Virus record (IMG/VR): IMGVR_UViG_3300042308_001511
Coordinates: 1-64,000 of that record
DNA length: 64,000 bases
Strand: one strand, 5' to 3'
The position numbers and the translations under genes were made by a program. Below the pieces are notes generated by a model. The model was not told where the DNA came from and did not search any database. It saw only the letters and a list, made by a program, of their open reading frames with translations. Shown here piece after piece: positions 11,546 through 64,000 of the stretch. Within the stretch, counting starts at the first letter, position 1; every line of letters begins with the position of its first letter.

Positions 11546-13426
11546 ATGATTGAGGATTTAAGAAAACGAATTATTGAAGCCAATGAGGCTTACAGAAATG
11601 GTGATGCAATAATATCCGATATGGAGTTTGATGCACTATTAGACGAATTGACACTATTATCACCTGATGACGAATTACTATTAAAGATAGGACATAACGT
11701 AACAGACGATACTAGAAAAATGAAACTGCCTATTCCGATGGCATCAATGAACAAAATTAAGACAATTGATGAAATAAAAGATTGGCATAGACTTAAACTT
11801 ATACCTAGTGCAGTAGAAGTAATATGTACACCGAAATATGACGGATTATCTTTGTGTGTTAATGAGATTACCTGTGATGCAATCACACGAGGTGATGGAA
11901 CTTACGGTCAGAAATCTACCGAACACTACAGATTTATAGGTAATCACCTATACGACCAGAGAGAACCGGAATTTCAACAAAATACAAATGCATTTGGTTG
12001 CGGTCCTTTCGCCTATACATACGGTGAAGTAATTATGCCGAAATCGGTATTTTTAGAAAAATATGCAACAGAATTCGCAAATCCAAGAAACCTCGTAGCA
12101 GGTTTAATAAACTCAAAGACCATATCTGACCCTTTGAAAGATTGCCAATACATAAAATATGGTGCAGTTCTTCATGCAATTCAACAAAACCTATTCACAA
12201 CTAAAGCAGAACTTCTTGATTCACTTAATAATGGACAAAAGAAACAAGTACCTTACTACGTCTCTCCAATCACAGAACTTACAGAAGAGACATTGATTAA
12301 TTTATTTCATATGTGGTCTCAGGAATTTGAGATTGATGGAATTATTATCGAAGTCAACAACCTTGCAACACAGAAAACTTTAGGCAGAGAAGCAACTACC
12401 GGTAATCCTATCTACGCAAGAGCATTCAAACACGAGAGTTTTGAACAGAAAGCAGAGTCAACCGTTACCGGAATAAGTTGGAATATCTCAAAACAAGGTC
12501 TTCTAAAACCAATTGTACACATTAATCCTATCGGATTAGATGGTGTTACCGTTTCTAATGTTACTGGTAACAATGCTCGTTTTGTAAAAGATATGGGTAT
12601 TGGTGTAGGTGCCAAAGTAATAGTGAAAAGATCTGGTATGGTTATACCTAAAATTATCGATGTTGTGAAGACTGTTGATTTCACAGAACCTATCATCGAA
12701 GGTGTTGAAATTGGATGGAACGATGCCGGAATTGAATTGATAACATTGACCGAGACCGATGATCAACAATTGAAAAAGATTGTGGCATTCTTTGAAATTT
12801 TAGAAGCGGATAATGTAGGTGAAGGTGTAATCAAACAACTTTGGGACGCTGGATTTACAACAGTGAAATCGATACTTACTGCGAATGTTTCAGACTTTGA
12901 GAAGATTGAAGGATTTGGTAAGAGAAAAGCAAAAATTGTATTCGACTCTATCAAAAAATCCACAACAAATATACAATTGTCTAAGTTACAACACGCATCC
13001 GGTGTGTTTACGGGACTTGGCTCAAAAAAACTGGCATTACTCGAACACTTCTCACAGAAACCTACCATTGACCAGGTTATGGAGATTGAAGGTTTCGCGG
13101 AGATTTCTGCTAAGACATACGTTGATAATTTTGACAACTTTGTAGAATTTATACAGGGTCTTCCGGTCACAATCGAGGAGAAGAAAGAGGTGGTTCTTGA
13201 AGGAACTGATTTGGAAGGTATGGTTGTAGTTTTTACTGGAGTACGTGATAAAAAATCAGAAGAGGAGATTATTAGTAGAGGGGGTAAAATAGGATCTAGT
13301 GTAAGTAAAAATACTACACATCTTATTTGTAAAGATCCGGATAGTGGATCATCCAAATTAGAAAAGGCAAAATCTTTAGGAGTTAAGATAATGAGTTTAG
13401 ATGATTTAAATTCTTTATTATATTAA
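11546..13426 (+). CDS. ligA: NAD-dependent DNA ligase
   Basis: AYRNGDAIISDMEFDAL, KYDG adenylation motif, TRGDG, ANPRN, DGIII, OB fold, HhH repeats and a C-terminal BRCT (VVFTG...SVSKNTTHL...SSKLEKAKSLGV). Start moved to ATG 11546. Confidence 0.95.
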   Translation: MIEDLRKRIIEANEAYRNGDAIISDMEFDALLDELTLLSPDDELLLKIGHNVTDDTRKMKLPIPMASMNKIKTIDEIKDWHRLKLIPSAVEVICTPKYDGLSLCVNEITCDAITRGDGTYGQKSTEHYRFIGNHLYDQREPEFQQNTNAFGCGPFAYTYGEVIMPKSVFLEKYATEFANPRNLVAGLINSKTISDPLKDCQYIKYGAVLHAIQQNLFTTKAELLDSLNNGQKKQVPYYVSPITELTEETLINLFHMWSQEFEIDGIIIEVNNLATQKTLGREATTGNPIYARAFKHESFEQKAESTVTGISWNISKQGLLKPIVHINPIGLDGVTVSNVTGNNARFVKDMGIGVGAKVIVKRSGMVIPKIIDVVKTVDFTEPIIEGVEIGWNDAGIELITLTETDDQQLKKIVAFFEILEADNVGEGVIKQLWDAGFTTVKSILTANVSDFEKIEGFGKRKAKIVFDSIKKSTTNIQLSKLQHASGVFTGLGSKKLALLEHFSQKPTIDQVMEIEGFAEISAKTYVDNFDNFVEFIQGLPVTIEEKKEVVLEGTDLEGMVVVFTGVRDKKSEEEIISRGGKIGSSVSKNTTHLICKDPDSGSSKLEKAKSLGVKIMSLDDLNSLLY

Positions 13427-29200: not shown

Positions 29201-31425
29201 GTTCCTGAAGATCCACTTGTTCCTGAAGATCCACTTGTTCCTGATGACCCAGATGTTCCCGAAGATCCACTTGTTCCAGATGTTCCAGATGATCCACTAG
29301 AACCTGACGTTCCTGAAGATCCACTAGAACCAGATGTTCCGGATGTTCCAGATGATCCGGATGTTCCACTTGTCCCAGATGACCCTGAACTTCCTCTGGT
29401 TCCAGATGACCCGGATGACCCTGATGTTCCACTAGAACCAGATGTTCCACTTGATCCAGATGTTCCACTTGATCCTGATGTCCCACTTGATCCTGATGAA
29501 CCACTAGAACCAGATGTTCCACTAGAACCTGATGTTCCTGATGATCCACTAGAACCTGATGTTCCAGATGTTCCAGATGATCCGGATGTTCCACTAGAAC
29601 CAGATGTTCCTGATGTTCCACTAGAACCAGATGTTCCACTTGACCCAGATGACCCTGAACTTCCACTTGACCCAGATGATCCGGATGTTCCACTAGAACC
29701 AGATGTTCCTGATGTTCCACTAGAACCAGATGTTCCGGATGTTCCGGATGTTCCACTAGAACCGGATGTTCCTGATGTTCCAGATGATCCACTGGTCCCT
29801 GATGATCCTGAACTTCCTCTGGTTCCGGATGACCCGGATGACCCAGATGTTCCACTAGAACCAGATGTTCCACTTGACCCAGATGTTCCACTTGACCCAG
29901 ATGTTCCTGATGATCCACTAGAACCAGAAGTTCCGGATGTTCCTGATGATCCTGAACTTCCTCTTGTTCCTGAACTTCCGCTTGTTCCTGAACTTCCGCT
30001 TGTTCCTGATGTTCCACTTGACCCCGAAGATCCAGAAGAACCTGACGATCCGCTTGTTCCTGATGTTCCACTGGTTCCTGATGACCCACTGGTTCCAGTA
30101 CTACCGGATGTTCCTGACGATCCACTGGTTCCTGATGAACCGGATGTTCCAGTACTACCGGATGATCCTGAAGACCCCGAAGTTCCTGATGTTCCTCTGG
30201 TTCCTGATGTTCCTGATGACCCTGAAGATCCTGATGTTCCTGATGACCCACTGGTTCCAGTACTACCCGAAGATCCCGAAGTTCCTGATGAACCAGATGT
30301 TCCTGATGAACCGGATGTTCCACTGGTTCCTGACGATCCACTGGTTCCTGATGACCCACTGGTTCCTGACGATCCACTAGTTCCAGTACTACCCGAAGAT
30401 CCCGAAGTTCCTGATGAACCACTGGTTCCTGATGACCCTGATGACCCTGATGTTCCTGATGTTCCTGAAGACCCTGAAGACCCGGATGATCCTGATGAAC
30501 CACTGGTTCCTGATGTTCCTGATGATCCATCACCACCAGATGCACCATCCAAATTTACGGTCCATGATGCAGATGAATTAGTAGGACTTCCTACAACACC
30601 GGACGATAGTGGGTGTAGTGTGTTTCCTTTTGCTGCAACAATTTGTCCTGTTGTTTTGTTATATGAAGTTATTGTTGCTTCTATATAGTTTAGACTATCT
30701 ATTGCAAATATTATAGATTGACCTGGACTATATGCTAAGCCAGTTTCAATTGTTAGTGTCCAATTAGATTGTGATGAGTCTATAGTAAGTGTGTTTACAC
30801 TTCTGTACCTATCACCGGAACCTGTTGCACCCACCGGACCTGTTGCACCTGTTACACCACCACCAAAGGTCGCATTTGAGAGTGACTCACCTATATAATA
30901 GTAAATCTCAGCTGTTACGGGTATTGGTCCAGTTGTTTTTTCTTGCCAGAAAATACCCGATTGATATTGATGTATCCAGTTTCTCGCATCATCTGCAACA
31001 ATCTGTGTTGAAGTTCCATCAAAAACTTTTATACCATATAGAGAACCATAAGAGTTAGATATTGCATTATTTACTCTTACACCAGGATATATTCCAACTA
31101 AAGAACCTGTATTATATGCAAATGAAAGACCAGTCTTTGGATCTGTTCCTGAAGGAGCTACAGATGGCCACTCTAAGAAGTATCCGTGGTTGTTAGAAGA
31201 AGTATCTACAACAAAATCCGCAGTTACTAAAAGTGCAATTCCATTTGTCACTGCAGAACTTGGATCGTTTGAAGGTATAACACTTGTCCAAACGTTGGTA
31301 GAACTAACGTTAAAGAATATACCTTCGGCTTCACCACCAAGATCTTTATTGATATCGGTGTTTGATTTACCTAAAAGGTTTTTGAATGCTATATTCGCCT
31401 GGTTGTTCGGTTCTATTCCTGCCAT
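23296..31425 (-). CDS. Giant collagen-like tail fibre (Gly-Ser/Thr triplets) with C-terminal phage fibre domains
   Basis: 2709 aa; four G-X-Y blocks (GSS/GTS/GTR); C-terminal GNVGIGTxxP..LH / ERMRI repeats typical of phage fibres. Confidence 0.85.
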   Translation of the reverse strand: MAGIEPNNQANIAFKNLLGKSNTDINKDLGGEAEGIFFNVSSTNVWTSVIPSNDPSSAVTNGIALLVTADFVVDTSSNNHGYFLEWPSVAPSGTDPKTGLSFAYNTGSLVGIYPGVRVNNAISNSYGSLYGIKVFDGTSTQIVADDARNWIHQYQSGIFWQEKTTGPIPVTAEIYYYIGESLSNATFGGGVTGATGPVGATGSGDRYRSVNTLTIDSSQSNWTLTIETGLAYSPGQSIIFAIDSLNYIEATITSYNKTTGQIVAAKGNTLHPLSSGVVGSPTNSSASWTVNLDGASGGDGSSGTSGTSGSSGSSGSSGSSGTSGTSGSSGSSGTSGSSGTSGSSGSTGTSGSSGTSGSSGTSGSSGTSGTSGSSGTSGSSGTSGSSGSTGTSGSSGTSGSSGSSGTSGTRGTSGTSGSSGSSGSTGTSGSSGTSGSSGTSGSTGTSGSSGTSGTSGTSGSSGSSGSSGSSGTSGTSGSSGTSGSSGTRGSSGSSGTSGTSGSSGSSGTSGSSGTSGSSGTSGSSGTSGSSGSSGTRGSSGSSGTSGSSGTSGTSGSSGTSGTSGTSGSSGTSGTSGSSGTSGSSGSSGSSGSSGSSGTSGSSGTSGTSGSSGTSGSSGTSGTSGSSGSSGTSGSSGTSGSSGSSGSSGTSGSSGTSGSSGTSGSSGTSGSSGSSGTRGSSGSSGTSGTSGSSGTSGTSGSSGSSGTSGSSGSSGTSGTSGSSGTSGSSGTSGSSGTSGSSGTSGSSGTSGSSGTSGSSGTSGSSGTSGTSGSSGSSGTRGSSGSSGTSGSSGTSGSSGSSGTSGSSGSSGTSGSSGSSGTSGSSGSAGSSGTSGTSGSSGTSGSSGSSGTRGSSGSSGTSGSSGTSGTSGSSGTSGSSGTSGSSGTSGSSGSSGTRGSSGSSGTSGTSGSSGTSGTSGSSGSSGTSGTRPIMSLSYSASSLSLTTGSKTLPINPSSPIVNLGWTQGTRVRIWNSATTYMEGQIASSITNPQTTDILVNVDYVVGTGTYDDWLVSIIGDVGVAGSSGSSGSAGSSGTSGTSGSSGTSGSSGTRGSSGSSGTSGTSGSSGTSGSSGTSGSSGSSGTSGSSGSSGTRGSSGSSGTSGTSGSSGTSGSSGSSGTSGSSGSSGTRGSSGSSGTSGSSGTSGTGFNSITTPGPNRILTADGASSNSAIARNNLTFDNNTLTLTGNATFSGNTSVNSLTIYNGVVGTTETNILVLGTDGVVRYKSSISLGGTSGSSGTSGSSGTSGSSGTSGTSGSSGSSGTSGTSGSSGSSGTSGSSGTSGSSGTSGSSGTSGTSGSSGSSGTRGSSGSSGTSGSSGTSGSSGTSGTSGSSGSSGSSGTSGSSGTSGSSGTSGSSGTSGSSGTSGTSGSSGSSGTSGSSGSSGTSGPSGSSGTSGSSGTSGSSGTSGSSGTSGSSGTRGSSGSSGTSGSSGSSGTSGSSGTSGSSGSSGTRGSSGSSGTSGSSGTSGSSGTSGSSGSTGTSGSSGTTGTSGSSGTTGTSGSSGSSGTSGSSGSSGQSDKYATTSTTSNTIVSSGSKTFTVGTGLAYTPNQTVLISSGADYMNATVTSYNSGTGVLVVSVNSGVGLGNTYNSWTVNLAGASGGNGTNGTSGSSGSSGSSGTSGSSGTSGSSGSSGTRGSSGSSGSSGSSGTSGSSGTSGSSGTSGSSGSSGTSGSSGTSGSSGTSGSSGTSGSSGTSGTSGSSGTSGSSGTSGSSGSSGTRGSSGSSGTSGSSGTSGSSGTSGSSGTSGSSGTSGSSGTSGSSGSSGTRGSSGSSGTSGSSGSSGTSGSSGSSGTSGSSGTSGSSGTSGTQGPQGSTGPIGPTGSLALTGNTNNGIITLNGTSPNVTAEQNLTFDGSILNLTGTFSATGSVTIAGPLTVEYVGTASISSTNITEQYWYQIGSVSNPSGRGNIRIIISYTGGNYLPVTYVIDAYKDYTDVTTLSLQKFGNANYIKEVRIVKNENPTTTSTIYYLEGLFSIDQSPGHDMRIYVEKTLGYSLGWTWASGELIKSTQTIDPLNVRWLSRATFPISLGGSSLESLYIANQTNGGATSSHKQWNITDSGSTQSYRLNFNDNTNTVMTLEGENNYVGIGTTTPISPLHINFAGDDSVLSLSRNVVSTTNTAVNGLVQFMNGTYSVAGVGSITAGATQAGSLVFRTGTISTGNRAIASNGVLERMRIASDGNVGIGDYSNTAINPTSYLSINTGPLGTSYSAGTNALHALMIGSPSTGGDYFVMGVDQRMDFAYMYAATRGVGGTKPIIMQADGGGVSIGTFSNTAKMHIWASSVATGFRLQDTTQGVNKALVSDATGHGSWLTYSNILAAVNGVTGSGVVNYVPYWRSVNNLSATSSIYLNGDNVGIGTLSAAARLHITSNTVSAIIASGSTTTDLVRITQTGTGNAFVVEDFTNPDTTQFVISTSGDVGIGTASPSAKLDVAGSINVLSGLNNTSLRPTVSAGTLTNGEIRAYGASGSNYDDGFLRISAGGGTNPGSGKTYIDITGYSTVDDMNNNVVIGTRGTERMRVDRFGNVGIGLTVPTAELHVRSNIANSTIIKTDGVAGEILTATDNLVGSLFSVNDISGIPVFEAFSDNTIVMGDYQAPSLYTTTKQVRAAGLVNSTIYQFSATTYTSAHIDYNVQSGLSTRAGTIVAIWNGTNLEYNETSTQDIGSGTGAITLNVSLSGTNVLLSATTAVGGGIWTIKAIIRAV
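25950..26597 (-). repeat. 9-bp-period coding repeat block 4, ending in canonical collagen GPQGSTGPIGPTG
   Basis: Same units as block 1; boundaries approximate. Confidence 0.85.
26866..27727 (-). repeat. 9-bp-period coding repeat block 3
   Basis: Same units as block 1; boundaries approximate. Confidence 0.85.
27985..28362 (-). repeat. 9-bp-period coding repeat block 2
   Basis: Same units as block 1; boundaries approximate. Confidence 0.85.
28640..30530 (-). repeat. 9-bp-period coding repeat block 1 (GSS/GTS)
   Basis: Tandem degenerate units such as gatgttcct/gatgatcct on the + strand; boundaries approximate. Confidence 0.9.
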
Positions 31426-51805: not shown

Positions 51806-54352
51806 TCAGGCACCACACGCCTCGCAATCGGACGGATTATCAAGTGAACACGAGATTTCGGCCATTTGTTCATCAACCGTTTTAGTCTCCTGAACCGTGA
51901 ACTTAACTGCATCGGATGCTGATTTGTTTCTAAGATAGTAGATACCAGTTTTTAGTGTATATCTCTTATCTCTGTAACACTTAGGATTTCCTTCCTCATC
52001 ATAAATGACTTGGATGTTATCACCCTGTGGGATAATTGCTTTACCATCCTCACCAATCATAAGATTTCTTCTTCCCCATCCATAAAAGTGCATAGCAGTA
52101 AGTTTAGCGAAGTTTGGTGAATCCATAAATATGTTCATCGATTGTGTCTGATCAATGAATGCACCTCTTTCTGCCGCCATCTCAATCACATCTCTCTGTT
52201 TGATTTCGTAAACAGTTTTGAAAATTTCTTTTAGATTCGTTGGTATTTCAGGAATATTCTGAACAGATCCGTTCTCTGTAATGATTTTCTTTCTTAGTGT
52301 CTCGTTCCATATTCCTAATTTCACAAGTTCTTTCACAAGGTATTTATTTACTAATATGAAAGTTCCAGAAAGAACACTTCTTGTATACATATTTGATGTC
52401 TGTGCTTCACAAGATGCTTCGTTTCCTAAGATAGATGCAGTGGATGCAGTTGGCATAATACATGTCGTAAGAGAGTTTCTAACACCATATTTCTTAACTT
52501 CTTCTCTTAGTTTTTCCCAATCCCATCTTTTACCTGGTTTTGTTCCCCAAAGGTCAAATTGAAACTTACCTTGTGAAATTGGAGATCCTTCGTAAGATGC
52601 ATAAGTTCCCTGAGTCTTAGCTAAATCACAAGAAGCTTTTATAGAAGCATAATAGATAGTTTCGAATATCTCTTTATTCAATTGTTTAGCATCATCTGAC
52701 TCATATGAAATACCCAAAGTGAAGAATACATCTGCAAGACCTTGTACTCCAAGTCCAACTGGTCTGTGACAAAGGTTTGAGAACTTAGCGGCCGGAGATG
52801 GATAATAGTTGACATCAATAACATTGTTCAAATTTACAATTGCATCGTAAGCAATATCATAAAGTTTGTTGAAATTGTAAGTTTTGTTTTTATTGATAAA
52901 CTTAGGTAGAGCAATTGATGCAAGGTTACAAACCGCAGTCTCATTCACTTCATTTTGTCCCCAGAACTCACCAAGATTCAAAGACTCTAATTTTGCTTTA
53001 TCCTTCAATATCTCTTTACCAAATTCAGTAACGCCTGTACATTCTACAATTTCAGCGCACAAATTAGACGATTTGATGTTTCCAATATTTGATTGGTTTG
53101 ACTTCTCATTGATAGCATCTTTATAAAGTAAATAAGGTGTACCTGTCTCAATTTGTGATTCGAGTATTTTGTTCCACACTTCTCTGGCTTTTACAACTTT
53201 TTTGTATTTACCTTCGGACTCATATTTGATGTATAGTTCAGCGAACTTTTCACCATAAGTATCATTTAGACCCGGACACTCATGTGGACACATTAGTGAC
53301 CAATCTGTATCAAGTTCTACTCTTTCCATAAAAAGGTCATTCATCCACATCGCTAAAAATAAATCCCTAGCTCTCAATTCCTCTTTACCTTGGTTCTTTC
53401 TAAGATCTAAGAAGTCCATTATGTCAGCATGCCATGGTTCCATATAGATTGCCATAGAACCTTTTCTTTTGCCACCACCTTGATCCACCGCACGTGCAGT
53501 CTCATTGTAGATTTTCAAGAAAGGAACAATACCGTTAGAAGTTCCATTTGTTCCAGCGATGTAAGTACCTGTTGCTCTAACTTTATTGAAAGCAATTCCA
53601 ATACCACCTGCATTCTTAGAAATAAGAGCAGCTTCTTTAAGAGTATCAAAGATACCTTCAATAGAATCACCTTGTGTATCGAGAAGGAAACAAGATGATA
53701 ACTGAGGTCTAGGTGTACCTGAGTTGAATAATGTTGGTGTTGCATGAGTGTAGTAACCCTCTGACAATTCGTTATAAGTCTTTACAACCTTTTCCATATT
53801 CTCACCCCAAATTTGAAGTGCGGTTCTCATATACATATATTGTGGTCTTTCTGCAACTCTTCCGTTTATTTTAAGAAGATAAGATTTTTCCAAAGTTTTG
53901 TATCCAAAGAAGTCAAAGTTATGGTCTCTTGAATGTACAATTGCAGAATCTAATTCATCTGCGTGTGTCTTAACTAAGTTTCTGAAATTGAGTGAAACTA
54001 TTGGAGAGTGTTTACCTGTTCTTGGGTCTACATATTTGTAGAGGTCATCAACTGTTTCTGAGAAACTTTTTTTGGTTTCTTTGTGCAATGCTGTTATCGC
54101 TAACCTTGCAGCAAGTACTGAATAGTCTGGATGTTTTGTAGCCAACGATGCTGCAGTTTCCATCGCAAGTTCATCGAGTATAGACGTTCTGATGTCTGGT
54201 GTTATACCCTCGATTACCTTTTGTGCTATTTCGAATGGAACGATCCACTTTTGGTCCAGACCATAAGTCTGTTGTGTGATTCGATCCACGATTTTGTTGA
54301 AGTTTACGGCTTCTTTTTTACCGTTTCTCTTCGTTACTTTTATCATGCTCAT
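51806..54352 (-). CDS. nrdA: Ribonucleotide reductase class Ia alpha subunit
   Basis: ATP cone (VTKRNG), HATPTLFN, LSSCFL, QGGGKRKG, SNLCAEI, MPTAST, YYLR, C-terminal CEAC. Confidence 0.97.
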   Translation of the reverse strand: MSMIKVTKRNGKKEAVNFNKIVDRITQQTYGLDQKWIVPFEIAQKVIEGITPDIRTSILDELAMETAASLATKHPDYSVLAARLAITALHKETKKSFSETVDDLYKYVDPRTGKHSPIVSLNFRNLVKTHADELDSAIVHSRDHNFDFFGYKTLEKSYLLKINGRVAERPQYMYMRTALQIWGENMEKVVKTYNELSEGYYTHATPTLFNSGTPRPQLSSCFLLDTQGDSIEGIFDTLKEAALISKNAGGIGIAFNKVRATGTYIAGTNGTSNGIVPFLKIYNETARAVDQGGGKRKGSMAIYMEPWHADIMDFLDLRKNQGKEELRARDLFLAMWMNDLFMERVELDTDWSLMCPHECPGLNDTYGEKFAELYIKYESEGKYKKVVKAREVWNKILESQIETGTPYLLYKDAINEKSNQSNIGNIKSSNLCAEIVECTGVTEFGKEILKDKAKLESLNLGEFWGQNEVNETAVCNLASIALPKFINKNKTYNFNKLYDIAYDAIVNLNNVIDVNYYPSPAAKFSNLCHRPVGLGVQGLADVFFTLGISYESDDAKQLNKEIFETIYYASIKASCDLAKTQGTYASYEGSPISQGKFQFDLWGTKPGKRWDWEKLREEVKKYGVRNSLTTCIMPTASTASILGNEASCEAQTSNMYTRSVLSGTFILVNKYLVKELVKLGIWNETLRKKIITENGSVQNIPEIPTNLKEIFKTVYEIKQRDVIEMAAERGAFIDQTQSMNIFMDSPNFAKLTAMHFYGWGRRNLMIGEDGKAIIPQGDNIQVIYDEEGNPKCYRDKRYTLKTGIYYLRNKSASDAVKFTVQETKTVDEQMAEISCSLDNPSDCEACGA

Positions 54353-55393: not shown

Positions 55394-56725
55394 TTATTGA
55401 TCCAAAAATTGATCGTTCTCTAATGTTAGATAAGTTGGATTTAAGTTCAATTTTATCTGAGCTCTCGAGAAATCACCATCCCTCTGTTTTAATAGTTTGA
55501 ACCTGTAGATATTCTGTCTTTTCATCTCCTCTGTTCTTATTATAGCAAAAAAGGTATCTGCCGTTTCTGCAATCGCCTTAGATTCTGGAACAGATTCAAG
55601 TGTTATATCTGCTGAGTTCCAAGCATCTTTGGCAACTTGTACTCCGGTGATGACTGGTGCTCCCCATTTGGCACCTATCGCTCTTAGACCCTCTGCAAGT
55701 GATTTTCCTTTGGTATATAGGTTATCTGCAATTGCACCCTTTGTTGCGGCAATAAGTGTGATGTAATCCACCACAATCATGTCTATTTTTATACCTCTCT
55801 TCTCCTTTAACTTCTGTATATAATTATCAAAGTCAGAAACTGTTGCAGTTCCTGCTGCCCAGAACTTAGTTATAATTTTTCCGACTTTCTTATCAAAGAG
55901 ATCACCACCAGATTGACTACTAAGTGATGAAATCCTTTTCTTTATCATTTCTGTGTCCTTTGAGAGTGTATCGTAGTCATTGATTGGTATCTGAAGTCTC
56001 ATAGCACCCAGCCTCTTCATAACCTTTCTCTCACTCATCTCAAGTGTTATGTAAAGAACGTTATGACCCATATTAGCAGATTTCACAGCAAAGTTCTGCA
56101 TCCATAAACTCTTACCTCCATTAGTTTGAGCCATAATTACGTTTAGTGTGGCAATATCCCATCCACCACCGAGCATATGATCTATTGTTTCAAATCCACA
56201 CTTAACTTTAAATTTTGCAGAATCTTGAACGTGATTTTCTGGTTCGTCAAAGTCAGAACCGAGATCATCTTCGTCAACGAAATTTGTAGAAGACATCTCA
56301 TCTACGATGTTTTTTATACGGTTAGCTGCCTCTATTGCTTTTTCGAAATCTGATATATTGTCGAGACCTCTTGTCTCATCTATGATATCAACGGTTCCGT
56401 TCTTTAACCTATTGGAAAGTAACCACCCATTGAACTTTGGTTCTATAAAGTTTTTTTCATCATATTCTCTCAAATCCACCTGTAAGATTGACTTTAGTAT
56501 TTCTTTAGTGATGATACCTTCTTTGTCATCTATATTGACCATATCGAGTATTTGTCTTGGTGTAGGAACCGCTATATCTGATCCGGATATCATATATTTC
56601 CTTATAACACCATAAACAAATTGTATTTCGGAATTTCTGAAAAAATGTGGTTGTACAAGTTCAAAATATTTCTTATTTTTGAGTATGTAATTGAAGTAAA
56701 CCTTCTCTAATTGTGGGGTAGTCAT
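55394..56725 (-). CDS. Replicative DnaB/T4 gp41-like helicase
   Basis: Walker A AQTNGGKS, YITLEMS, VVDYI, VITGVQ, ESKAIAETAD, KQRDG. Confidence 0.92.
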   Translation of the reverse strand: MTTPQLEKVYFNYILKNKKYFELVQPHFFRNSEIQFVYGVIRKYMISGSDIAVPTPRQILDMVNIDDKEGIITKEILKSILQVDLREYDEKNFIEPKFNGWLLSNRLKNGTVDIIDETRGLDNISDFEKAIEAANRIKNIVDEMSSTNFVDEDDLGSDFDEPENHVQDSAKFKVKCGFETIDHMLGGGWDIATLNVIMAQTNGGKSLWMQNFAVKSANMGHNVLYITLEMSERKVMKRLGAMRLQIPINDYDTLSKDTEMIKKRISSLSSQSGGDLFDKKVGKIITKFWAAGTATVSDFDNYIQKLKEKRGIKIDMIVVDYITLIAATKGAIADNLYTKGKSLAEGLRAIGAKWGAPVITGVQVAKDAWNSADITLESVPESKAIAETADTFFAIIRTEEMKRQNIYRFKLLKQRDGDFSRAQIKLNLNPTYLTLENDQFLDQ

Positions 56726-58356: not shown

Positions 58357-60024
58357 TTATGCCTCAAATTTCACGTTGATCTTTTTTATCGCTAGCTGGA
58401 ACCATTCCGGAAGAAAGTGCGAACTATGTCTCATAACATCACCAAATCCACCATCTATTATTATCGTGTCTGCGTAATCTATATCAGACCTTACGGCACG
58501 ACCAGTCATTTGTATCAATCCACAGACGGTTTTCCATGAGTACCAGTCAGAGTTTGTGTGTTGTCGCATCTTATTTTTTTGTGACGCAAGTGATGGATAT
58601 GGTACTTTGGCAATCACCTGAAAACGTGCTTTGTCGTTGTCGAAACTAACACCAGTATCCATAGATGGTGAAACTATCACCGTTGCATCCTCTGTCTCAC
58701 AATGTTCTCTTAGAACTTCATCTTTGTTGCTAGAGTCGTGGAATCTAAGTCTTTTGTCTTTAACCGACTTCTGAATCCATCCGGATAGTTCGAAAGAGTT
58801 TGTATGTATTATTCCTTTTTTATTTTTGTACTTATCGAGAAGTTTGCTTATATAAGGAATGTAATTTTTGAATGTCTCATCTTTACTTTTGTAAGACATC
58901 TTTCCTAAGGGCATATAATAGATTGGTCTATTTCTTAATGGGAAAGGAGATTCTATGGAGTAGAATGCTGCCAAATCTGCATCAAGTCCGTTGAGTTGAC
59001 AAAATAAGTTTTTATCAAGTATAGTTCCGGACATAAGAAAAACCATATCATAGTTACTAAAAACATATTTGTCTAAATAATCACTTGCCCATATAGGTTC
59101 AAGTGAAAGTTCTTTCTGACGTGTTTTTTCGTTCCAGTTACTTTCGAGTACCCAGTTGTCTGGATTCTCTTTGTATTCTTTCAAAAATACATCTATTTTA
59201 ACTTGTAACTGTTTTAAGTCTGTAATAAGGTTCATCAGTTTTACATCAGAGTTCTTTTTACCGAGTACTTTGTCTATCTTTAGGTCCCTTTTGTCAGTTT
59301 TTTCACTTCTTCCTGCAGTGACTAAACCTTTCTCCATACCTTCTAATGAGTCTAATATATCACCATTCAACTCCTTTAGAAATTCTACATAAGTTGATAT
59401 ACTTGAAACTGACTTCAACTTCTTCATAAGTCCGTATTCGTTACCCAATTTATATCTCTTTAGTGTTGTTTCTGTTATCTTTATTGATATAAAGTTAGAC
59501 ATTACATCATCAAATTCGTGTGCTTCGTCAACTATAAGAACCCTAGACCCTCTACTTTCTAATAATTTGGGACTATATATGGCGTAGAGTATGTATAGGT
59601 AAAAGTTTGTCAGAGATACTGTTCCTGACATATAACCTTCTCTTGCACTAGCGTATGGACATTCCTCACACCTTGTTTTGTTCAATCGGTTGAACTCGGC
59701 ACCCTGTGCACATGAACACGAATAAGCTTCACACTCATAGTTCTCCTTTCCCTTCAAATCACATATGGATGTATATGTCTCAGAGTATTGATCCTGTAGT
59801 ATCTTACTATTTGTTATCACATCTACCCTCGCCATACGAGAAACATTCTTTCGGTACCAGTCTGCAATCATAAGTGCTAGGTGGCTTTTGCCCACTCCGA
59901 CGGGGAGGTTCAAAAGGAAGAATTTAGTGGTTGGATTTTTCTTCCATTGTGAGTCAACAAACTCGAGAGCTTCTCTTTGAGCTTTTCTCGGTTTATATAT
60001 CCCTAGGTCTTTTTTGAGTGACAT
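58357..60024 (-). CDS. DinG/XPD-family SF2 helicase
   Basis: Q motif (PRKAQ), PVGVGKS, Fe-S Cys cluster, DEAH, MSGT, KVPYP, QMTGRAVRS. Confidence 0.9.
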   Translation of the reverse strand: MSLKKDLGIYKPRKAQREALEFVDSQWKKNPTTKFFLLNLPVGVGKSHLALMIADWYRKNVSRMARVDVITNSKILQDQYSETYTSICDLKGKENYECEAYSCSCAQGAEFNRLNKTRCEECPYASAREGYMSGTVSLTNFYLYILYAIYSPKLLESRGSRVLIVDEAHEFDDVMSNFISIKITETTLKRYKLGNEYGLMKKLKSVSSISTYVEFLKELNGDILDSLEGMEKGLVTAGRSEKTDKRDLKIDKVLGKKNSDVKLMNLITDLKQLQVKIDVFLKEYKENPDNWVLESNWNEKTRQKELSLEPIWASDYLDKYVFSNYDMVFLMSGTILDKNLFCQLNGLDADLAAFYSIESPFPLRNRPIYYMPLGKMSYKSKDETFKNYIPYISKLLDKYKNKKGIIHTNSFELSGWIQKSVKDKRLRFHDSSNKDEVLREHCETEDATVIVSPSMDTGVSFDNDKARFQVIAKVPYPSLASQKNKMRQHTNSDWYSWKTVCGLIQMTGRAVRSDIDYADTIIIDGGFGDVMRHSSHFLPEWFQLAIKKINVKFEA

Positions 60025-60343: not shown

Positions 60344-60647
60344 ATTCTAAGATATTGTCTATCTGTCTGTTGCGTCTTATCGTTTTGAGCAGGTTTTTAA
60401 GTTCCTTTTCCTCGAACTTCAACCGATTCTTGCTACTCTTACCGAGTTTCTCTTTACACCATTCACCCGGTTCACAGAACCTACCGACCGGAAATTTGTG
60501 TAGCAGGTAGAAGTCTTGGTTGTCCCAATTATCGAGATCTTCGCAGTAGGCCACTATCGCGTCGTCGTATTCGGTCCACACAGACCTTATCTCAGGAAGT
60601 GCCTGACCACGTTGACAGGATATTATGTAGACAAATTGTTCTTTCAT
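60342..60647 (-). CDS. Hypothetical protein with C-terminal RNRQIDNIL motif
   Basis: 101 aa, ATGA overlap with the polB stop. Confidence 0.7.
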   Translation of the reverse strand: MKEQFVYIISCQRGQALPEIRSVWTEYDDAIVAYCEDLDNWDNQDFYLLHKFPVGRFCEPGEWCKEKLGKSSKNRLKFEEKELKNLLKTIRRNRQIDNILE

Positions 60648-62170
60648 ATCTGCGATTCTAATTTTTTTATCTCATCGAGAACTGCTTTTAGTTCTTCTTT
60701 TCGATCCATCATTATCTTTTTGTTCTTTTTCCTATCCGCATAAACGTCTTCAAGCATAATAAGTGTAGGTGACATTCGTTTCTCAAATACAACTCCGTTC
60801 ACACAAAGAACGTGTTTATCATAATCTATCTCACGTCCGTTATCACAATGTGTTAGTTTCTTAGTATCCTGTACTCCAACAAAGTTTTCTGGTGCGATAA
60901 AGAATTGCCTTTGAGTTGTTGGATAAAGTGAGGCAAAATCGTATGTCACGCACCATCTGTTCATTCCAACCACCGGATCTTTTACCCACCCACCAGCTAA
61001 TGCTGACTCACCTTCACCTTTACCTTCTTTGAAAAGTACTATGTTATCCATTTCTCGGAATCTACCTCTCAAAACACCTTCAGTGATTGCTAATGATGCC
61101 AATGCGTTGTTCATCTGTGAAACAACGTCTACAATTTTTATTTTAGATAATGAAGAGATTGCATATACAATAGATATGTAATTTTTAGAGTCATGTATCT
61201 TTTGAACCAACACAGAATCGACGGCGTTGTAATACATAAATGTTTCGAAGTCATCCTCATATAATTTCTGTAAAGATCCTGTATATTTTATCTTCTCAAC
61301 ACCAACCAATTTATTCGATACGAAATCCAGTGAAGATGACTCTTTAACTTTTATGGATGTGTCACATATCTCATATAGTTGCATATAGTCAAAAATCATT
61401 CGATGCATAGGTACTTCGAATTCAGTTCCCCATATTTTATTCATTCTTTTGAGTGGTGATGATTCTGCTGGATTTATTGTCCATTCTTTCCCGTTCATCC
61501 ATTTGGTTATCTTCCTAGCTCGGTTGACAAGGTATAACCAGTCATAGTTGAGGAAGTTCCAACCGGTCATCAAAGGCATTTTTGGTGCCATCTTATGGAA
61601 GAATGTGTAAAGCATTTCAAATTCGTCTTCGTACTTAACATATTTGAATTTATAATCTACACCAAACTTCTCAAAGTATTTATTTGTGTTCTTCTGTATT
61701 CTAAGTTGCATATCTTCTGGCATGTCTTTTAGTCCCAGAAGTATTATTTTATCATCATATACTATGGATATAGACAGAACCTGTGTAGATGCTCCTTCTT
61801 TAACAACATTTCCTTCGGCATCTTTAACGTCTGCCGGTTCTGGAAATCCGTCAACAATCTCGGTCTCGATATCAAGGAAGTAAACTTTCGGAAGGTTGAA
61901 CTCAAAAAGCTCTTCCTGTTCCTTTGCTGGTAATCCATCTAAGAACTCGTAGATTGCGTACCTGTCAGGTCTGTCGACCTCTATTTGTTTAACGTGTTTT
62001 CCATCCCACGATTTGTAGTCTGGGTGTCTTTGTGGATCATTCTCTTCACACGTTACATATTTCATAGGATTCTCCCAGTCGTAGTATTTTAGTTTTATTT
62101 CTCCAGATTTGTCTACGTAGCTGGCTACCAGTTTTTTTGTATGTGTTAGGTATTGTGTCTCTATAAGCAT
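60644..62170 (-). CDS. Family B DNA polymerase, N-terminal part (3'-5' exonuclease plus motif A)
   Basis: ExoI DIETE, ExoII GWNFLNYD, ExoIII YNAVD, motif A DFASLYP; ends in the fingers helix without KxxxNSxYG or YGDTDS. Confidence 0.88.
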   Translation of the reverse strand: MLIETQYLTHTKKLVASYVDKSGEIKLKYYDWENPMKYVTCEENDPQRHPDYKSWDGKHVKQIEVDRPDRYAIYEFLDGLPAKEQEELFEFNLPKVYFLDIETEIVDGFPEPADVKDAEGNVVKEGASTQVLSISIVYDDKIILLGLKDMPEDMQLRIQKNTNKYFEKFGVDYKFKYVKYEDEFEMLYTFFHKMAPKMPLMTGWNFLNYDWLYLVNRARKITKWMNGKEWTINPAESSPLKRMNKIWGTEFEVPMHRMIFDYMQLYEICDTSIKVKESSSLDFVSNKLVGVEKIKYTGSLQKLYEDDFETFMYYNAVDSVLVQKIHDSKNYISIVYAISSLSKIKIVDVVSQMNNALASLAITEGVLRGRFREMDNIVLFKEGKGEGESALAGGWVKDPVVGMNRWCVTYDFASLYPTTQRQFFIAPENFVGVQDTKKLTHCDNGREIDYDKHVLCVNGVVFEKRMSPTLIMLEDVYADRKKNKKIMMDRKEELKAVLDEIKKLESQI

Positions 62171-62221: not shown

Positions 62222-62734
62222 TTAGAAGTCACAGTCGTAGTAATCCAATATTCCACCATCACTCTTTACGAATATTAGTTCGTCGCGTCTTACAAGTTGA
62301 TAATCATAATGCCTTCCTAATTTGAACAGCGTTCTTATGAAAGGTATTCCTTCACCTTCGTTAACTTGTTTTTCTTCTATCATTAGACAAAGTATTTTTC
62401 TGTCTTCCTCAGGATTGTAATTAACTACTTCATCTTCATGATCTCTTTCGAGTCCTTTTTTACCATATGTTATGAATGTTGATTCAAGTCTTTCACCACT
62501 AGGTGTATACTCTATCCATACGTTGTCACCTATTTTTATATTGACATCTTCATCCTTTAAATAAACCCTTGTCCAGAAGTATACTTTCTCAGGTGTTACT
62601 TCTACCTGTATTTCACTTACATCGTCACTCAAATCGGTGGTATCTACATCCTGTAGTTGTTCTCTTACAAAGTCGTAAAGAGATATTGGATCTCCAGACC
62701 CAATAATGTATTCCTTTTCAGTACTAGTTTCCAT
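62222..62734 (-). CDS. Hypothetical protein
   Basis: 170-aa ORF in the operon. Confidence 0.65.
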   Translation of the reverse strand: METSTEKEYIIGSGDPISLYDFVREQLQDVDTTDLSDDVSEIQVEVTPEKVYFWTRVYLKDEDVNIKIGDNVWIEYTPSGERLESTFITYGKKGLERDHEDEVVNYNPEEDRKILCLMIEEKQVNEGEGIPFIRTLFKLGRHYDYQLVRRDELIFVKSDGGILDYYDCDF

Positions 62735-63008
62735 TTTTTTCGTTTGTTTTTTTATATTCTAACCAAGACTCCAAACTTTCGTAGTCTCTTGATTTACCCG
62801 CATCAAATGCTGCATTCAATTCTTTATAATTGTATTTTGGTATCGTCTTTGGTATTTCATAATTGTGGTTTCCATTCGACACAAAAGCTTGAAATAGTTT
62901 CATCTCCTCATTATATGGTCCATATTTTTCCTCGTTACGGTTGTTTATTTCGATTACGATTTGGTGTGAAGGATTGTTAGGGTCAAGACCCTCGTTCAAT
63001 TTGCTCAT
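62724..63008 (-). CDS. Hypothetical protein
   Basis: 94-aa ORF overlapping its neighbours. Confidence 0.6.
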   Translation of the reverse strand: MSKLNEGLDPNNPSHQIVIEINNRNEEKYGPYNEEMKLFQAFVSNGNHNYEIPKTIPKYNYKELNAAFDAGKSRDYESLESWLEYKKTNEKNGN

Positions 63009-63571
63009 ATTATCTCGTTTATTTTTTTGTTTCTTACATATGCCTTAGTCCACTCTTCAAGACTCAACACACCGAAGTCTGGATCCTCCACGTTGTGCTC
63101 ACTACGTACAGGTGATCTAGGCAGCAAAGTAGCATACCTATTTTCCTGGTGTCGTATGTATTTGTCATAGTTTATACAATAACCTTTGTCGGTATTGTTG
63201 TTTTTGTCAGTATCCAATAAAAACTCTAAAACAAATACATCACACGGAATACTCCTAATAAGACGTACATACTCTACAAACGGATAGTCATCTATCAGAT
63301 TGTGTATCATAAGACCTTCAACAAATACAAAAGTGTTAGGTTCCTTCTCTACGAGTTCACGGACTAATGTCAATCTTTTTGAGTCCTCAACTATGTCGGT
63401 TGAAAGAGTGAATTTCCACGTGAACTTCGAGTCAGGATATGGCATAACCTTCTGAACTTCTCTATGTGTGAGAAGAATAGATTGGTAGCCAGAGGTTTCA
63501 AGTCTCTTAGTCATCTCGATAAAAAAATAGGTCTGACTATTTGTGTCAAGCTTTATTAGTGTGTTCGGCAT
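63005..63571 (-). CDS. Hypothetical protein with C-terminal RNKKINEII motif
   Basis: 188-aa ORF. Confidence 0.65.
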   Translation of the reverse strand: MPNTLIKLDTNSQTYFFIEMTKRLETSGYQSILLTHREVQKVMPYPDSKFTWKFTLSTDIVEDSKRLTLVRELVEKEPNTFVFVEGLMIHNLIDDYPFVEYVRLIRSIPCDVFVLEFLLDTDKNNNTDKGYCINYDKYIRHQENRYATLLPRSPVRSEHNVEDPDFGVLSLEEWTKAYVRNKKINEII

Positions 63572-63603: not shown

Positions 63604-63999
63604 TTAGTAGGGACAATACGGAATCCACTTTTCTTCAAACCAGAAAGTTCTTCCGGTGCTATCCTTTACCCCAACTCCTTTTTGGTAGAATACCCACTCA
63701 GAAAAGTCTTTTACATCACCACCGTTAGGATTATGCCAGTCTCTGAGTTGACCTCCATTATATTTGTATGCTTGTAATGGAATATCACAACACATATCGA
63801 GTATGTCTGGTCTTTTGTTTATAACATCTCTGGCTTTATCGAACGGATTTTCACCTAAGTAATAAAGTATAGTCGAACGAAGATAGTTGCCAATTCCATT
63901 AAAGTATTTCTGATCCAACAACGCCTCACAGATTGGTTTGTCGAATACCTTTTTGTGTAGGTTATTTAGTACATTTTCTTTAAAAACATCAAATTCTTT
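63604..63999 (-). CDS. Fpg/Nei DNA glycosylase, NEIL1-like (5' part outside the window)
   Basis: Frame is open to the window edge: FKENVLNNLHKKVFDKPICEALLDQKYFNGIGNYLR (H2TH) and DSTGRTFWF (zincless finger). Confidence 0.88.
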   Translation of the reverse strand, partial: KEFDVFKENVLNNLHKKVFDKPICEALLDQKYFNGIGNYLRSTILYYLGENPFDKARDVINKRPDILDMCCDIPLQAYKYNGGQLRDWHNPNGGDVKDFSEWVFYQKGVGVKDSTGRTFWFEEKWIPYCPY

Positions 64000-64000
64000 A

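What the first reader, a model, noticed from the sequence alone, without database searches (positions are those of the whole stretch)
63604..63999. Phage glycosylase strikingly similar to metazoan NEIL1
Seen: FKENVLNNLHKKVFDKPICEALLDQKYFNGIGNYLRSTILY...PFDKAR...DILDMC...P...GG...F..W...DSTGRTFWF. From memory, human NEIL1 reads FRENVLRNLADKAFDRPICEALLDQRFFNGIGNYLRAEILY...PFEKAR...DRHGRTIWF, with a zincless finger; bacterial Fpg/Nei instead have a C4 zinc finger. Inference: a phage-borne NEIL1 clade relevant to the origin or horizontal transfer of eukaryotic NEIL1.
Basis: partly seen in the sequence, partly recalled or inferred. Interest (0 to 1): 0.7.

Follow-up and report, generated by a model that had tools for sequence, protein, structure and literature searches.

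The report
NEIL1-type DNA glycosylase in a huge phage
A 344-kb freshwater bacteriophage carries, inside its DNA-replication gene block, a compact DNA-repair glycosylase that is the same type as human NEIL1, and it belongs to a large, mostly viral clade that is the closest known relative of the eukaryotic enzyme.

Summary
Window 63604-63999 (minus strand) is the C-terminal half of a 261-aa gene that runs 390 bases past the window end. The protein keeps the Fpg/Nei catalytic residues (Pro2, Glu3, Lys54) and has no zinc-finger cysteines. Human NEIL1 is by far its best solved match: sequence E 1e-28, family profile 8e-69, and a pLDDT 94 model that superposes at Z 28.9 and 1.9 A. Mimivirus Nei1, bacterial Nei/Fpg and NEIL2/3 all score much lower.

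The carrier is a tailed huge phage, not a giant eukaryotic virus. Its PolB and helicase are 71-79% identical to 635-642 kb Mahaphage genomes, and it has a gp6-type baseplate protein.

The gene belongs to a large compact clade: 360 IMG/VR contigs, against only 11 loci in about 185,000 prokaryote species genomes. At least two of those loci are truly chromosomal (pelagic Poribacteria, Marinimicrobia).

In trees, NEIL1-like sequences separate from canonical Fpg/Nei (98/99) and eukaryotic NEIL1 is monophyletic (100/98). Whether eukaryotes are sister to the compact clade or nested within it is unresolved (AU p 0.48).

The gene is under purifying selection, is syntenic with the replisome genes, and most likely does replication-linked base excision repair. 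It is a new member of a known enzyme kind, with real evolutionary interest.

The parts
63604..64000 (-). NEIL1-type Fpg/Nei DNA glycosylase/AP lyase gene. Only the C-terminal 131 codons lie in the window. The full gene is record 63604-64389 (= L001:2105-2890, minus strand), 261 aa, protein P0001.
   Evidence: ORF. Pfam Fapy_DNA_glyco and H2TH. NEIL1 is the best PDB match by sequence, profile and fold. AF2 model pLDDT 94.4. dN/dS 0.06-0.14.
63005..63571 (-). orf188, an unknown gene immediately downstream in the same transcriptional direction
   Evidence: ORF. No Pfam hit. Conserved only in the closest relative, L022. Covered by RNA-library contigs together with the 3' part of the glycosylase gene.
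62724..63008 (-). orf94, unknown
   Evidence: ORF. No Pfam hit. Found in 2 of 80 related loci.
62222..62734 (-). orf170, an unknown gene conserved between the glycosylase and PolB
   Evidence: Found next to the glycosylase in 24 of 80 IMG/VR loci and in LR745206.
60644..62170 (-). Family-B DNA polymerase, N-terminal part (exonuclease plus the start of the polymerase domain)
   Evidence: Pfam DNA_pol_B_exo1 and DNA_pol_B. phrog_262 and phrog_2062. 79% identity to huge phages LR745206 and LR756502. Linked to the glycosylase in 32 of 80 loci.
58357..60024 (-). Phage DNA helicase
   Evidence: phrog_2488 at E 1.6e-95. 71-73% identity to LR745206 and LR756502.
55394..56725 (-). DnaB-like replicative helicase
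   Evidence: Pfam DnaB_C at 4e-21.
51806..54352 (-). Ribonucleotide reductase large subunit
   Evidence: Pfam Ribonuc_red_lgC at 1e-199.
11546..13426 (+). NAD-dependent DNA ligase (LigA type), a candidate nick sealer for repair
   Evidence: Pfam DNA_ligase_aden, DNA_ligase_OB and BRCT.

Best explanation
The gene encodes a functional, compact (261 aa) NEIL1-type member of the Fpg/Nei family: a bifunctional DNA glycosylase/AP lyase with a zincless finger. It is carried by a freshwater Mahaphage-clade huge phage as a stable part of its replication gene block.

Inferred mechanism, by homology with NEIL1 and Nei. The N-terminal Pro2 amine attacks C1' of an oxidised base that has been flipped out, and forms a Schiff base. 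Glu3 and Lys54 assist. Met75 fills the vacated space in the helix. Asn168 of the H2TH motif and Arg247 of the zincless-finger hairpin hold the lesion-strand phosphates. Beta,delta-elimination then leaves a one-nucleotide gap, which phage or host end-processing, polymerase and ligase activities close.

The gene is co-oriented with a minimal ATP-ligase, PolB, two helicases and RNR, so its most likely role is replication-coupled removal of oxidised bases from the large phage genome in sunlit, oxic fresh water. The same genome also encodes UvdE.

Shown here: the sequence, fold, conserved residues, phylogenetic position, synteny, purifying selection and environmental distribution. Inferred: the chemistry, the substrates and the biological role.
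For: Catalytic and DNA-binding residues are conserved across 34 family members: M1, P2, E3, G53, K54, G74, G77, R125, G167, Y169, L170 and W250 are invariant, and M75, N168, R171 and R247 are at least 90% conserved. There is no CxxC pair (Cys only at 154, 200, 201, 259). The AF2 model has pLDDT 94.4 and pTM 0.90, with a C-terminal hairpin at 239-251. VIA-align gives Z 28.9, rmsd 1.9 A and 244 residues against hNEIL1 2-290, compared with MutM Z 24 and MvNei1 Z 21. Foldseek's top 50 hits are all hNEIL1. The family profile scores 8e-69 to NEIL1 against 7e-25 to MvNei1 and 2e-13 to EcNei. In the tree, the NEIL1-like clade has 98/99 support. dN/dS is 0.06-0.14 against relatives at 55-65% identity. 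Synteny with orf170 and PolB holds in 24-32 of 80 viral loci. Neighbouring genes: ATP-ligase; RecA-like, DnaB-like and RNR; UvdE and LigA; FEN-like. Phage identity rests. The phage is present in lake and river metagenomes from at least ten studies, and contigs from an RNA library cover most of the gene.
Against: No biochemistry exists for any member of the compact clade. In the query's own subclade, the NEIL1 residues R118/R119/F120 that contact the orphan base are replaced by Y111/M112/G113. The lesion-recognition loop differs too: Q214 sits where NEIL1 has K/R242, and a GGGQLxDWxNP motif is conserved instead. Substrate range may therefore differ from NEIL1. The Pfam H2TH score (28.6) is below the gathering threshold (34.7), and PF09292 does not hit this protein. 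No 3'-phosphatase of PNK3P type was found in the genome, so how the beta,delta-elimination product is processed is unknown. The nearest deposited relative, LR745206, lacks the gene, so it is dispensable for this phage group. The RNA-library contigs do not prove transcription.
Confidence: 0.8

Rival explanations
1. The carrier is a giant virus of eukaryotes (NCLDV), and the NEIL1 likeness reflects capture from a eukaryotic host, as proposed for Mimivirus Nei1.
For: The genome is large (344 kb) and AT-rich, and encodes tRNA-synthetase-like and chaperone-like genes. Mimivirus is the known precedent for viral NEIL1 orthologues (PMC3188539).
Against: PolB and helicase are 71-79% identical to the uncultured huge phages LR745206 and LR756502 and 29% to Lak phages. 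The genome has a T4 gp6-type baseplate wedge (phrog_219), virion and tail-spike PHROGs, and bacterial-type LigA and DnaB. No NCLDV capsid hit was found, although that search had no positive control. The family is much closer to NEIL1 than MvNei1 is.
Confidence: 0.02
2. It is an ordinary bacterial Nei or Fpg picked up from the host, and the NEIL1 likeness is confined to the universally conserved H2TH motif.
For: NCBIfam's best (sub-threshold) hit is endonuclease VIII. The H2TH block is the most conserved part of the protein (64% identity, against 34% overall).
Against: All curated Nei, Fpg and Nei2 equivalog models score far below their cut-offs (62.9 against 252; 47.5 against 203). There is no zinc finger. 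The tree separates it from E. coli Nei and Fpg and from nine Flavobacteriales homologues with 98/99 support. The full-length structural match to NEIL1 includes the C-terminal finger. Only 11 loci in about 185,000 prokaryote species genomes carry the clade's motif.
Confidence: 0.03
3. The protein has the NEIL1 fold and chemistry, but its job in the phage is not genome maintenance. It might process host DNA or non-canonical or defence-modified bases, or act on single-stranded or forked replication intermediates with a changed specificity.
For: The orphan-base-contacting residues R118, R119 and F120 are replaced, and the lesion loop has diverged, in the query subclade. The gene is dispensable in close relatives. 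It is embedded in the replisome module, not in a dedicated repair island.
Against: Catalytic and phosphate-binding residues are strictly conserved. In other phages the gene sits beside UvdE and FEN-type repair genes, and this genome also encodes UvdE. Cellular carriers are photic-zone bacteria (a proteorhodopsin gene is a neighbour), which fits photo-oxidative damage repair.
Confidence: 0.12
4. The gene is an assembly or binning artefact: a eukaryotic NEIL1 fragment joined to a viral contig.
For: The record is a metagenome-assembled sequence, classed as linear.
Against: The same gene order was assembled independently from other studies' runs (X3 contigs). Synteny holds in 24-32 other viral contigs. 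The ORF is intron-free and compact, with the local GC content. It branches outside the eukaryote clade, which has 100/98 support.
Confidence: 0.01

Closest known systems
Human and other eukaryotic NEIL1 (endonuclease VIII-like 1; PDB 1TDH, 5ITQ-5ITY, 6LWA-6LWR)
   Same: Same three-module architecture: an N-terminal beta-sandwich with Pro2, Glu3 and Lys54, the H2TH motif FNGIGNYLR, and a zincless-finger hairpin with GRTxWF (Arg247 = Arg277). Met75 corresponds to Met81 and Asn168 to Asn176. The structures superpose over residues 2-261 against 2-290 at 1.9 A, Z 28.9, 34% identity.
   Different: It is 261 aa long and has no counterpart of NEIL1's roughly 100-residue disordered C-terminal interaction tail. 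R118/R119/F120 are replaced by Y/M/G in this subclade. The lesion-recognition loop carries Q214 and a GGGQLxDWxNP motif in place of the K/R242-G-Y244 loop. Pfam PF09292 is not detected in this protein, though it is in 15 of 34 clade members. The gene is intron-free, sits in a phage, and branches outside the eukaryote clade.
Mimivirus Nei1 (MvNei1, L315; PDB 3A42, 3A45, 3A46, 3VK7, 3VK8), the published 'viral NEIL1 ortholog'
   Same: It is virus-encoded, has a zincless finger and belongs to the Fpg/Nei family (PMC3188539).
   Different: It is much more distant from NEIL1 and from this clade: profile E 7e-25 against 8e-69, and Z 21.2 at 20% identity. It is carried by an amoeba-infecting NCLDV, not a phage. 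It could not be placed in my tree because no sequence id was available.
E. coli endonuclease VIII (Nei) and Fpg/MutM
   Same: Same superfamily, the same Pro2/Glu3/Lys catalytic set and the same H2TH motif.
   Different: They carry a four-Cys zinc finger. Sequence matches are only E 1e-9 to 1e-13 and about 18-20% identity. They are separated from the NEIL1-like clade in the tree with 98/99 support, and the curated NCBIfam cut-offs are not reached.
Chromosomal NEIL1-like genes of pelagic Candidatus Poribacteria and a Neomarinimicrobiota MAG
   Same: They belong to the same compact zincless clade, at 32-36% identity to the query and 259-281 aa. They nest within the compact radiation.
   Different: They are cellular. 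Their neighbours are sulfatases, RlmL and an L,D-transpeptidase in Poribacteria, and UbiE, glutaredoxin and proteorhodopsin in Marinimicrobia. They retain the RRF loop. Their distribution is patchy: 2 of 61 sampled Poribacteria genomes.

Membership tests
Fpg/Nei (H2TH) DNA glycosylase superfamily | N-terminal Met-Pro-Glu with Pro2 as the nucleophile, Glu3, and a catalytic Lys about 50 residues in | tested here: met
   P2, E3 and K54 are present and invariant in 34 clade members.
Fpg/Nei (H2TH) DNA glycosylase superfamily | N-terminal beta-sandwich domain (Pfam PF01149) | tested here: met
   34.9 bits against a cut-off of 25.5. The fold is confirmed in the model.
Fpg/Nei (H2TH) DNA glycosylase superfamily | Helix-two-turn-helix motif (Pfam PF06831) with the phosphate-binding Asn | tested here: met
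   The FNGIGNYLR motif with N168 is present and superposes on NEIL1. The Pfam score of 28.6 is below the 34.7 cut-off, so membership here rests on motif and structure.
NEIL1 subfamily | A zincless finger: a C-terminal beta-hairpin without the four Cys, carrying the conserved Arg (R277 in hNEIL1) | tested here: met
   There is no CxxC pair. The hairpin lies at 239-251 with R247 in GRTFWF. It aligns with NEIL1 up to residue 290.
NEIL1 subfamily | Groups with NEIL1 rather than Nei, Fpg or NEIL2/3 in sequence, profile and tree | tested here: met
   The clade has 98/99 support. NEIL2, NEIL3 and MvNei were compared by profile only and are not in the tree.
NEIL1 subfamily | Pfam PF09292 (Neil1-DNA_bind) | tested here: inconclusive
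   Not detected in P0001 at E up to 1. Detected in 15 of 34 clade members (best E 2.7e-8) and in many relatives' precomputed annotations.
NEIL1 subfamily | Void-filling and orphan-base triad Met81, Arg118, Phe120 | tested here: not met
   M75 is conserved, but R118/R119/F120 are replaced by Y111/M112/G113 in the query's six-member subclade. Other clade members keep RRF.
NEIL1 subfamily | Lesion-recognition loop with K/R242 and Y244 | tested here: not met
   The aligned loop reads GGQLRDWHNP with Q214 at the 242 position.
NEIL1 subfamily | Disordered C-terminal protein-interaction tail (about residues 290-390) | tested here: not met
   The protein ends at residue 261, which corresponds to about NEIL1 residue 290.
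NEIL1 subfamily | Excision of oxidised pyrimidines, Fapy and hydantoin lesions with beta,delta-elimination | not testable with these tools
   This needs enzyme assays.
Bacterial endonuclease VIII (Nei, NCBIfam NF007763) and Fpg (TIGR00577) | Score above the curated equivalog cut-off, plus a four-Cys zinc finger | tested here: not met
   62.9 against 252 bits, and 47.5 against 203.3 bits. No zinc finger.
Mahaphage-clade huge phage (the carrier) | Replication proteins cluster with the 634-735 kb and Lak phage genomes, and tailed-phage structural genes are present | tested here: met
   PolB is 79% and helicase 71-73% identical to LR745206 and LR756502. Baseplate wedge phrog_219. Clade definition from PMC7162821. 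No terminase or capsid tree was made.

The most novel reading that the evidence does not exclude
Eukaryotic NEIL1 did not arise by duplication within eukaryotes or directly from a mitochondrial Nei or Fpg. Instead it was acquired once, early in eukaryote evolution, from the compact zincless clade that today lives mainly in huge phages and a few marine bacteria. On this reading the zincless finger and the NEIL1 active-site architecture were invented in the prokaryotic virosphere. The best tree nests the monophyletic eukaryote clade inside the compact radiation (82/92), but a plain sister relationship is not rejected (AU p 0.48).
Probability: 0.35. Interest if true: 0.75.

Novelty: new member of a known kind. 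Interest (0 to 1): 0.55.

Why it matters
NEIL1 has been treated as a eukaryotic, largely metazoan, invention whose only non-eukaryotic counterpart was Mimivirus Nei1. H2TH glycosylases in eukaryotes are generally assumed to come from the mitochondrial ancestor (PMC3188539, PMC8307549).

This work shows a large, diverse NEIL1-type clade with intact catalytic residues in huge phages, with rare chromosomal copies in photic-zone bacteria. By sequence, profile and fold it is far closer to human NEIL1 than the Mimivirus enzyme is.

That has three consequences:
- It gives a concrete sister or source group for testing where NEIL1 and its zincless finger came from.
- It offers small, tail-less, probably easily expressed natural NEIL1 variants with altered intercalation and lesion-recognition loops, useful for structure-function work.
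- It suggests that huge phages invest in replication-linked base excision repair alongside UvdE, FEN, RecA and two ligases.

I found no paper describing phage NEIL1 homologues. Automated pipelines (JGI) do already label many of these proteins 'endonuclease VIII-like 1'.

Tried and rejected
- **NCLDV capsid (PF04451).** Searched in the record and in three distant carrier contigs, with no hits. The control genomes cannot ring for this family, so the negatives carry little weight.
- **Phage hallmark Pfams.** Gp23 capsid, Phage_sheath_1 and Terminase_6C gave no hits in this or the distant contigs. Phage identity therefore rests on PHROGs and on similarity to deposited huge phages.
- **3'-phosphatase (PNK3P).** Not found in the genome.
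- **tRNAs.** None in the window.
- **Cultured and deposited phages (INPHARED).** tblastn found only a stray 1.8-kb record with an E. coli-type nei at 25% identity. LR745206 was searched directly and lacks the gene.
- **Cluster look-ups.** These gave no organism names for compact-clade proteins.
- **Deepest compact lineages.** Their contigs were mostly too short to tell the carrier. Two long ones look like huge phages.
- **'Saprospirales MAG' hit.** Rejected as cellular: the contig carries a T4 gp21-type prohead protease, a clamp loader and a FEN. The Flavobacteriaceae MAG contig stays undecided.
- **AU test.** It could not separate 'eukaryotes sister' from 'eukaryotes nested'.
- **RNA-library contigs.** They cover the gene, but DNA carry-over cannot be excluded.
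- **Tree coverage.** MvNei1, NEIL2, NEIL3, plant and fungal Fpg and actinobacterial Nei2 could not be put in the tree, because no tool gave me their sequences as ids. They were compared only through PDB profile and fold searches.

Full report
**Observation.** The window is the first 64 kb of a 344,083-bp IMG/VR virus record. In the record the gene runs from 64389 down to 63604 and encodes 261 residues beginning MPELAELK (protein P0001). In the 59-residue H2TH block I count 38 identical positions (64%). Over the whole domain identity is about 34%.

**What the protein is.** Pfam finds the Fpg/Nei N-terminal domain above threshold and the H2TH domain just below it.

Matches to solved structures, by single sequence, by a profile of 34 family members (A1) and by structure (VIA-align Z):

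| Solved structure | Single sequence E | Family profile E | Structural Z |
|---|---|---|---|
| Human NEIL1 | 9e-29 | 8e-69 (235 bits) | 28.9 |
| Mimivirus Nei1 | no hit at E <= 1 | 7e-25 | 21.2 |
| Arabidopsis Fpg | about 1e-3 | 6e-23 | not noted |
| Lactococcus Fpg | 0.05-0.1 | 1e-21 | about 22 |
| E. coli Nei | 1.3e-9 | 2e-13 | not noted |
| Mimivirus Nei2 | about 2e-3 | 3e-9 | not noted |
| NEIL3 | about 7e-3 | 2e-7 | not noted |
| NEIL2 | 0.03 | 1e-4 | not noted |
| MutM (Z 24.1: thermophilic Bacillus, 1R2Y) | 0.05 (Thermus MutM, 1EE8) | 9e-13 | 24.1 |

In the profile search, the C-terminal segment aligns with NEIL1's zincless finger.

- An AlphaFold2 model built on that alignment is confident: pLDDT 94.4, pTM 0.90.
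- It superposes on human NEIL1 over model residues 2-261 against NEIL1 2-290, with rmsd 1.9 A over 244 residues. Foldseek's first 50 hits are all NEIL1.
- Curated bacterial models for Nei, Fpg and Nei2 are all far below their cut-offs.

Residue mapping:
- **Kept:** Pro2, Glu3, Lys54, Met75 (NEIL1 Met81), Asn168 (Asn176) and Arg247 in GRTFWF (Arg277). Most are invariant in the clade.
- **No zinc finger:** the only cysteines are at 154, 200, 201 and 259, so there is no four-Cys site.
- **Difference 1:** in the query's own six-member subclade the NEIL1 loop R118-R119-F120 reads Y111-M112-G113. Most other clade members keep RRF.
- **Difference 2:** the lesion-recognition loop carries a clade-specific GGGQLxDWxNP motif, with Gln214 where NEIL1 has the edited K/R242.
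- **Difference 3:** the protein ends where NEIL1's disordered interaction tail begins.
- **PF09292:** the NEIL1-specific finger model does not hit P0001, but hits 15 of 34 clade members.

**What carries it.** The record is a tailed huge phage.
- Its split family-B polymerase and a helicase are 79% and 71-73% identical to the 635 and 642 kb uncultured phages LR745206 and LR756502. They are about 40% identical to the 735 kb genome and 29% to Lak phages.
- These genomes define the Mahaphage clade, predicted to infect Bacteroidetes (PMC7162821).
- PHROGs find a T4 gp6-type baseplate wedge, virion and tail-spike proteins, and phage replication proteins.
- I found no NCLDV capsid, though that negative has no positive control.
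- Near-identical sequence occurs in lake, river and other freshwater metagenomes from at least ten studies. Contigs from an independent riverine study reproduce the local gene order.

**Context.** All genes here are on the minus strand, in this order:
1. Minimal ATP-dependent ligase (211 aa, adenylation domain only).
2. The glycosylase.
3. orf188, orf94 and orf170.
4. PolB N-terminal part.
5. Helicase.
6. A 298-aa ORF.
7. DnaB-like helicase.
8. A 301-aa ORF.
9. RNR large subunit.

A methyltransferase-like gene, an RNA-ligase-like gene and a RecA-like gene lie upstream.

- The order glycosylase - orf170 - PolB recurs in 24-32 of 80 related IMG/VR loci, down to about 53% glycosylase identity.
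- In LR745206 the orf170-PolB-helicase order is kept, but a thymidylate synthase gene occupies the glycosylase slot.
- Elsewhere the genome encodes UvdE (Pfam 6e-48), a FEN-like nuclease, a PolB-exo2-like exonuclease and an NAD-ligase.
- dN/dS against relatives at 55-65% identity is 0.06-0.14; dS is saturated for closer pairs.
- Contigs from one freshwater RNA library cover most of the gene and orf188, but not the flanking ligase or PolB. This suggests transcription but does not prove it.

**The family.**
- A word-indexed search of 5.8 billion proteins found 1,490 relatives, the best 120 at 61-96% identity, on contigs up to 656 kb. Many are labelled 'endonuclease VIII-like 1' by JGI.
- An exhaustive search of 50%-identity representatives found 931 clusters. 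Compact proteins of about 260 aa come first (E 1e-84 to about 1e-30). Longer proteins come next, and those I could name are eukaryotic NEIL1 from animals, Amoebozoa and Paulinella.
- IMG/VR holds 360 viral contigs with a relative.
- One genome per 185,579 prokaryote species holds only 11 loci with the clade's motif.
- The Poribacteria copies (several MAGs, two paralogues in one) sit among sulfatases, RlmL and an L,D-transpeptidase. The gene was found in only 2 of 61 sampled Poribacteria genomes.
- The Marinimicrobia copy sits among UbiE, glutaredoxin, an outer-membrane protein and a proteorhodopsin gene. Both of these are cellular.
- The 'Saprospirales' contig is a mis-binned T4-like phage. 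There the glycosylase lies between UvdE and a PolB-exo2-type exonuclease.
- In the five MAGs searched, the NEIL1-like gene was the only H2TH gene found.
- Other sampled contexts look like phage.

**Phylogeny.** The datasets were 150 rows (quick tree) and 99 rows (careful tree: IQ-TREE, LG+C20+F+G4 PMSF, UFBoot/SH-aLRT). The outgroup was E. coli Nei and Fpg plus canonical Flavobacteriales Fpg/Nei homologues: nine in the quick tree, eight in the careful tree. For the careful tree I left out one very long outgroup row, redundant animal and Poribacteria rows, and the longest or compositionally odd compact rows; they are listed in the script.

Results:
- All NEIL1-like sequences separate from the outgroup with 98/99 support.
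- All named eukaryotes, plus some unnamed long proteins, form one clade with 100/98 support.
- The query sits in a six-member clade (100/100) deep in the compact radiation.
- Poribacteria and Marinimicrobia form one nested clade (99/99).
- The eukaryote clade emerges from a polytomy of compact lineages (82/92), with a few compact lineages branching earlier.
- Forcing all non-eukaryotic sequences into one clade costs only 1.6 log-likelihood units (AU p 0.48).

The phage gene is therefore not a recent capture from an animal or any sampled eukaryote. The compact clade is the closest known relative of eukaryotic NEIL1. Whether the relationship is sister or ancestor, and so the direction of transfer, remains open.

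**Mechanism and role.** By homology, I infer a bifunctional glycosylase/AP lyase:
- Pro2 forms the Schiff base.
- Glu3 and Lys54 assist catalysis.
- Met75 plugs the gap left by the flipped base.
- Asn168 and Arg247 hold the lesion strand.
- Beta,delta-elimination yields a one-nucleotide gap that is closed by polymerase and ligase.

Three observations make replication-linked repair of oxidative base damage in the phage genome the most likely role: the stable position in the replisome module, the co-occurrence with UvdE, FEN and ligases, and the sunlit oxic habitats of both viral and cellular carriers. The changed orphan-base loop and lesion loop mean the substrate range could differ from NEIL1. 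A non-repair role cannot be excluded without assays.

**Novelty.** My literature searches found the Mimivirus enzymes, a metazoan 'MeNeil1' clade (PMC3188539) and the view that eukaryotic H2TH glycosylases came from mitochondria (PMC8307549). I found nothing on phage or Poribacteria NEIL1 homologues. Automated annotation already names many of these proteins NEIL1-like. I rate this a new member of a known enzyme kind, with above-average evolutionary interest.

Noticed in passing
window 23296-31425 (minus strand), especially 26000-30000: A 2,709-aa ORF contains a stretch where GC rises to 0.46 against about 0.35 elsewhere. Long ORFs are open in several other frames on both strands there, which points to a repeat-rich (possibly collagen-like) segment of a giant structural or fibre protein.
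   Followed up: no
window 60644-62170 (minus strand): The family-B DNA polymerase gene encodes only the exonuclease domain and the start of the polymerase domain (508 aa). It matches a 502-position PHROG profile, so the polymerase appears to be split, with the rest encoded elsewhere.
   Followed up: no
L001:2935-3570 (record 64434-65069, minus strand), just outside the window: Directly upstream of the glycosylase lies a 211-aa ATP-dependent ligase made of the adenylation domain only. It is not conserved next to the glycosylase in any of 80 related loci.
   Followed up: partly
L124:882-1799 (record 144882-145799, plus strand); also record 155272-156297 and 83412-84044: The phage also encodes a UvdE UV-damage endonuclease (Pfam 6e-48), a FEN-like nuclease and a PolB-exo2-type exonuclease, so it carries a multi-pathway repair kit.
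   Followed up: partly
L005/L006, L011:6737-7492, L138:8999-9679: In unrelated viral contigs the NEIL1-like gene repeatedly lies next to a PolB-exo2-type 3'-5' exonuclease, and in L011 also next to UvdE. This may be a functional pairing, for example for 3'-end clean-up after beta,delta-elimination.
   Followed up: no
L107, L108, L109, L111, L112 (Flavobacteriales genomes): These canonical Fpg/Nei homologues lack the four zinc-finger cysteines, so zincless fingers also occur in ordinary bacterial Fpg/Nei lineages outside the NEIL1-like clade.
   Followed up: no
P0244 (Pelomyxa schiedti, 791 aa): A protein that its source names uracil-DNA glycosylase has an N-terminal NEIL1 domain (residues 1-258). 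It may be a fusion of two glycosylases.
   Followed up: no
L021:1914-2693 and 3633-4331: In a Marinimicrobia MAG the NEIL1-like gene lies about 1 kb from a proteorhodopsin-type gene, in a clearly cellular context. The Poribacteria MAG XB_MAG1182 carries two paralogues (L014, L018).
   Followed up: partly
L003:3412-4470 (LR745206): In the closest deposited huge phage, the slot upstream of orf170-PolB holds a thymidylate synthase gene in place of the glycosylase-orf188-orf94 block.
   Followed up: partly
whole record G000: CheckV rates the 344-kb linear record as 91% complete, although its nearest relatives by PolB and helicase are 635-642 kb. The record may be a fragment, or this lineage may be much smaller. 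From N-terminal sequences alone, ORFs at record 138004-139902, 199526-201130 and 225222-226907 look like DnaK, a class-I tRNA synthetase and PurH.
   Followed up: no
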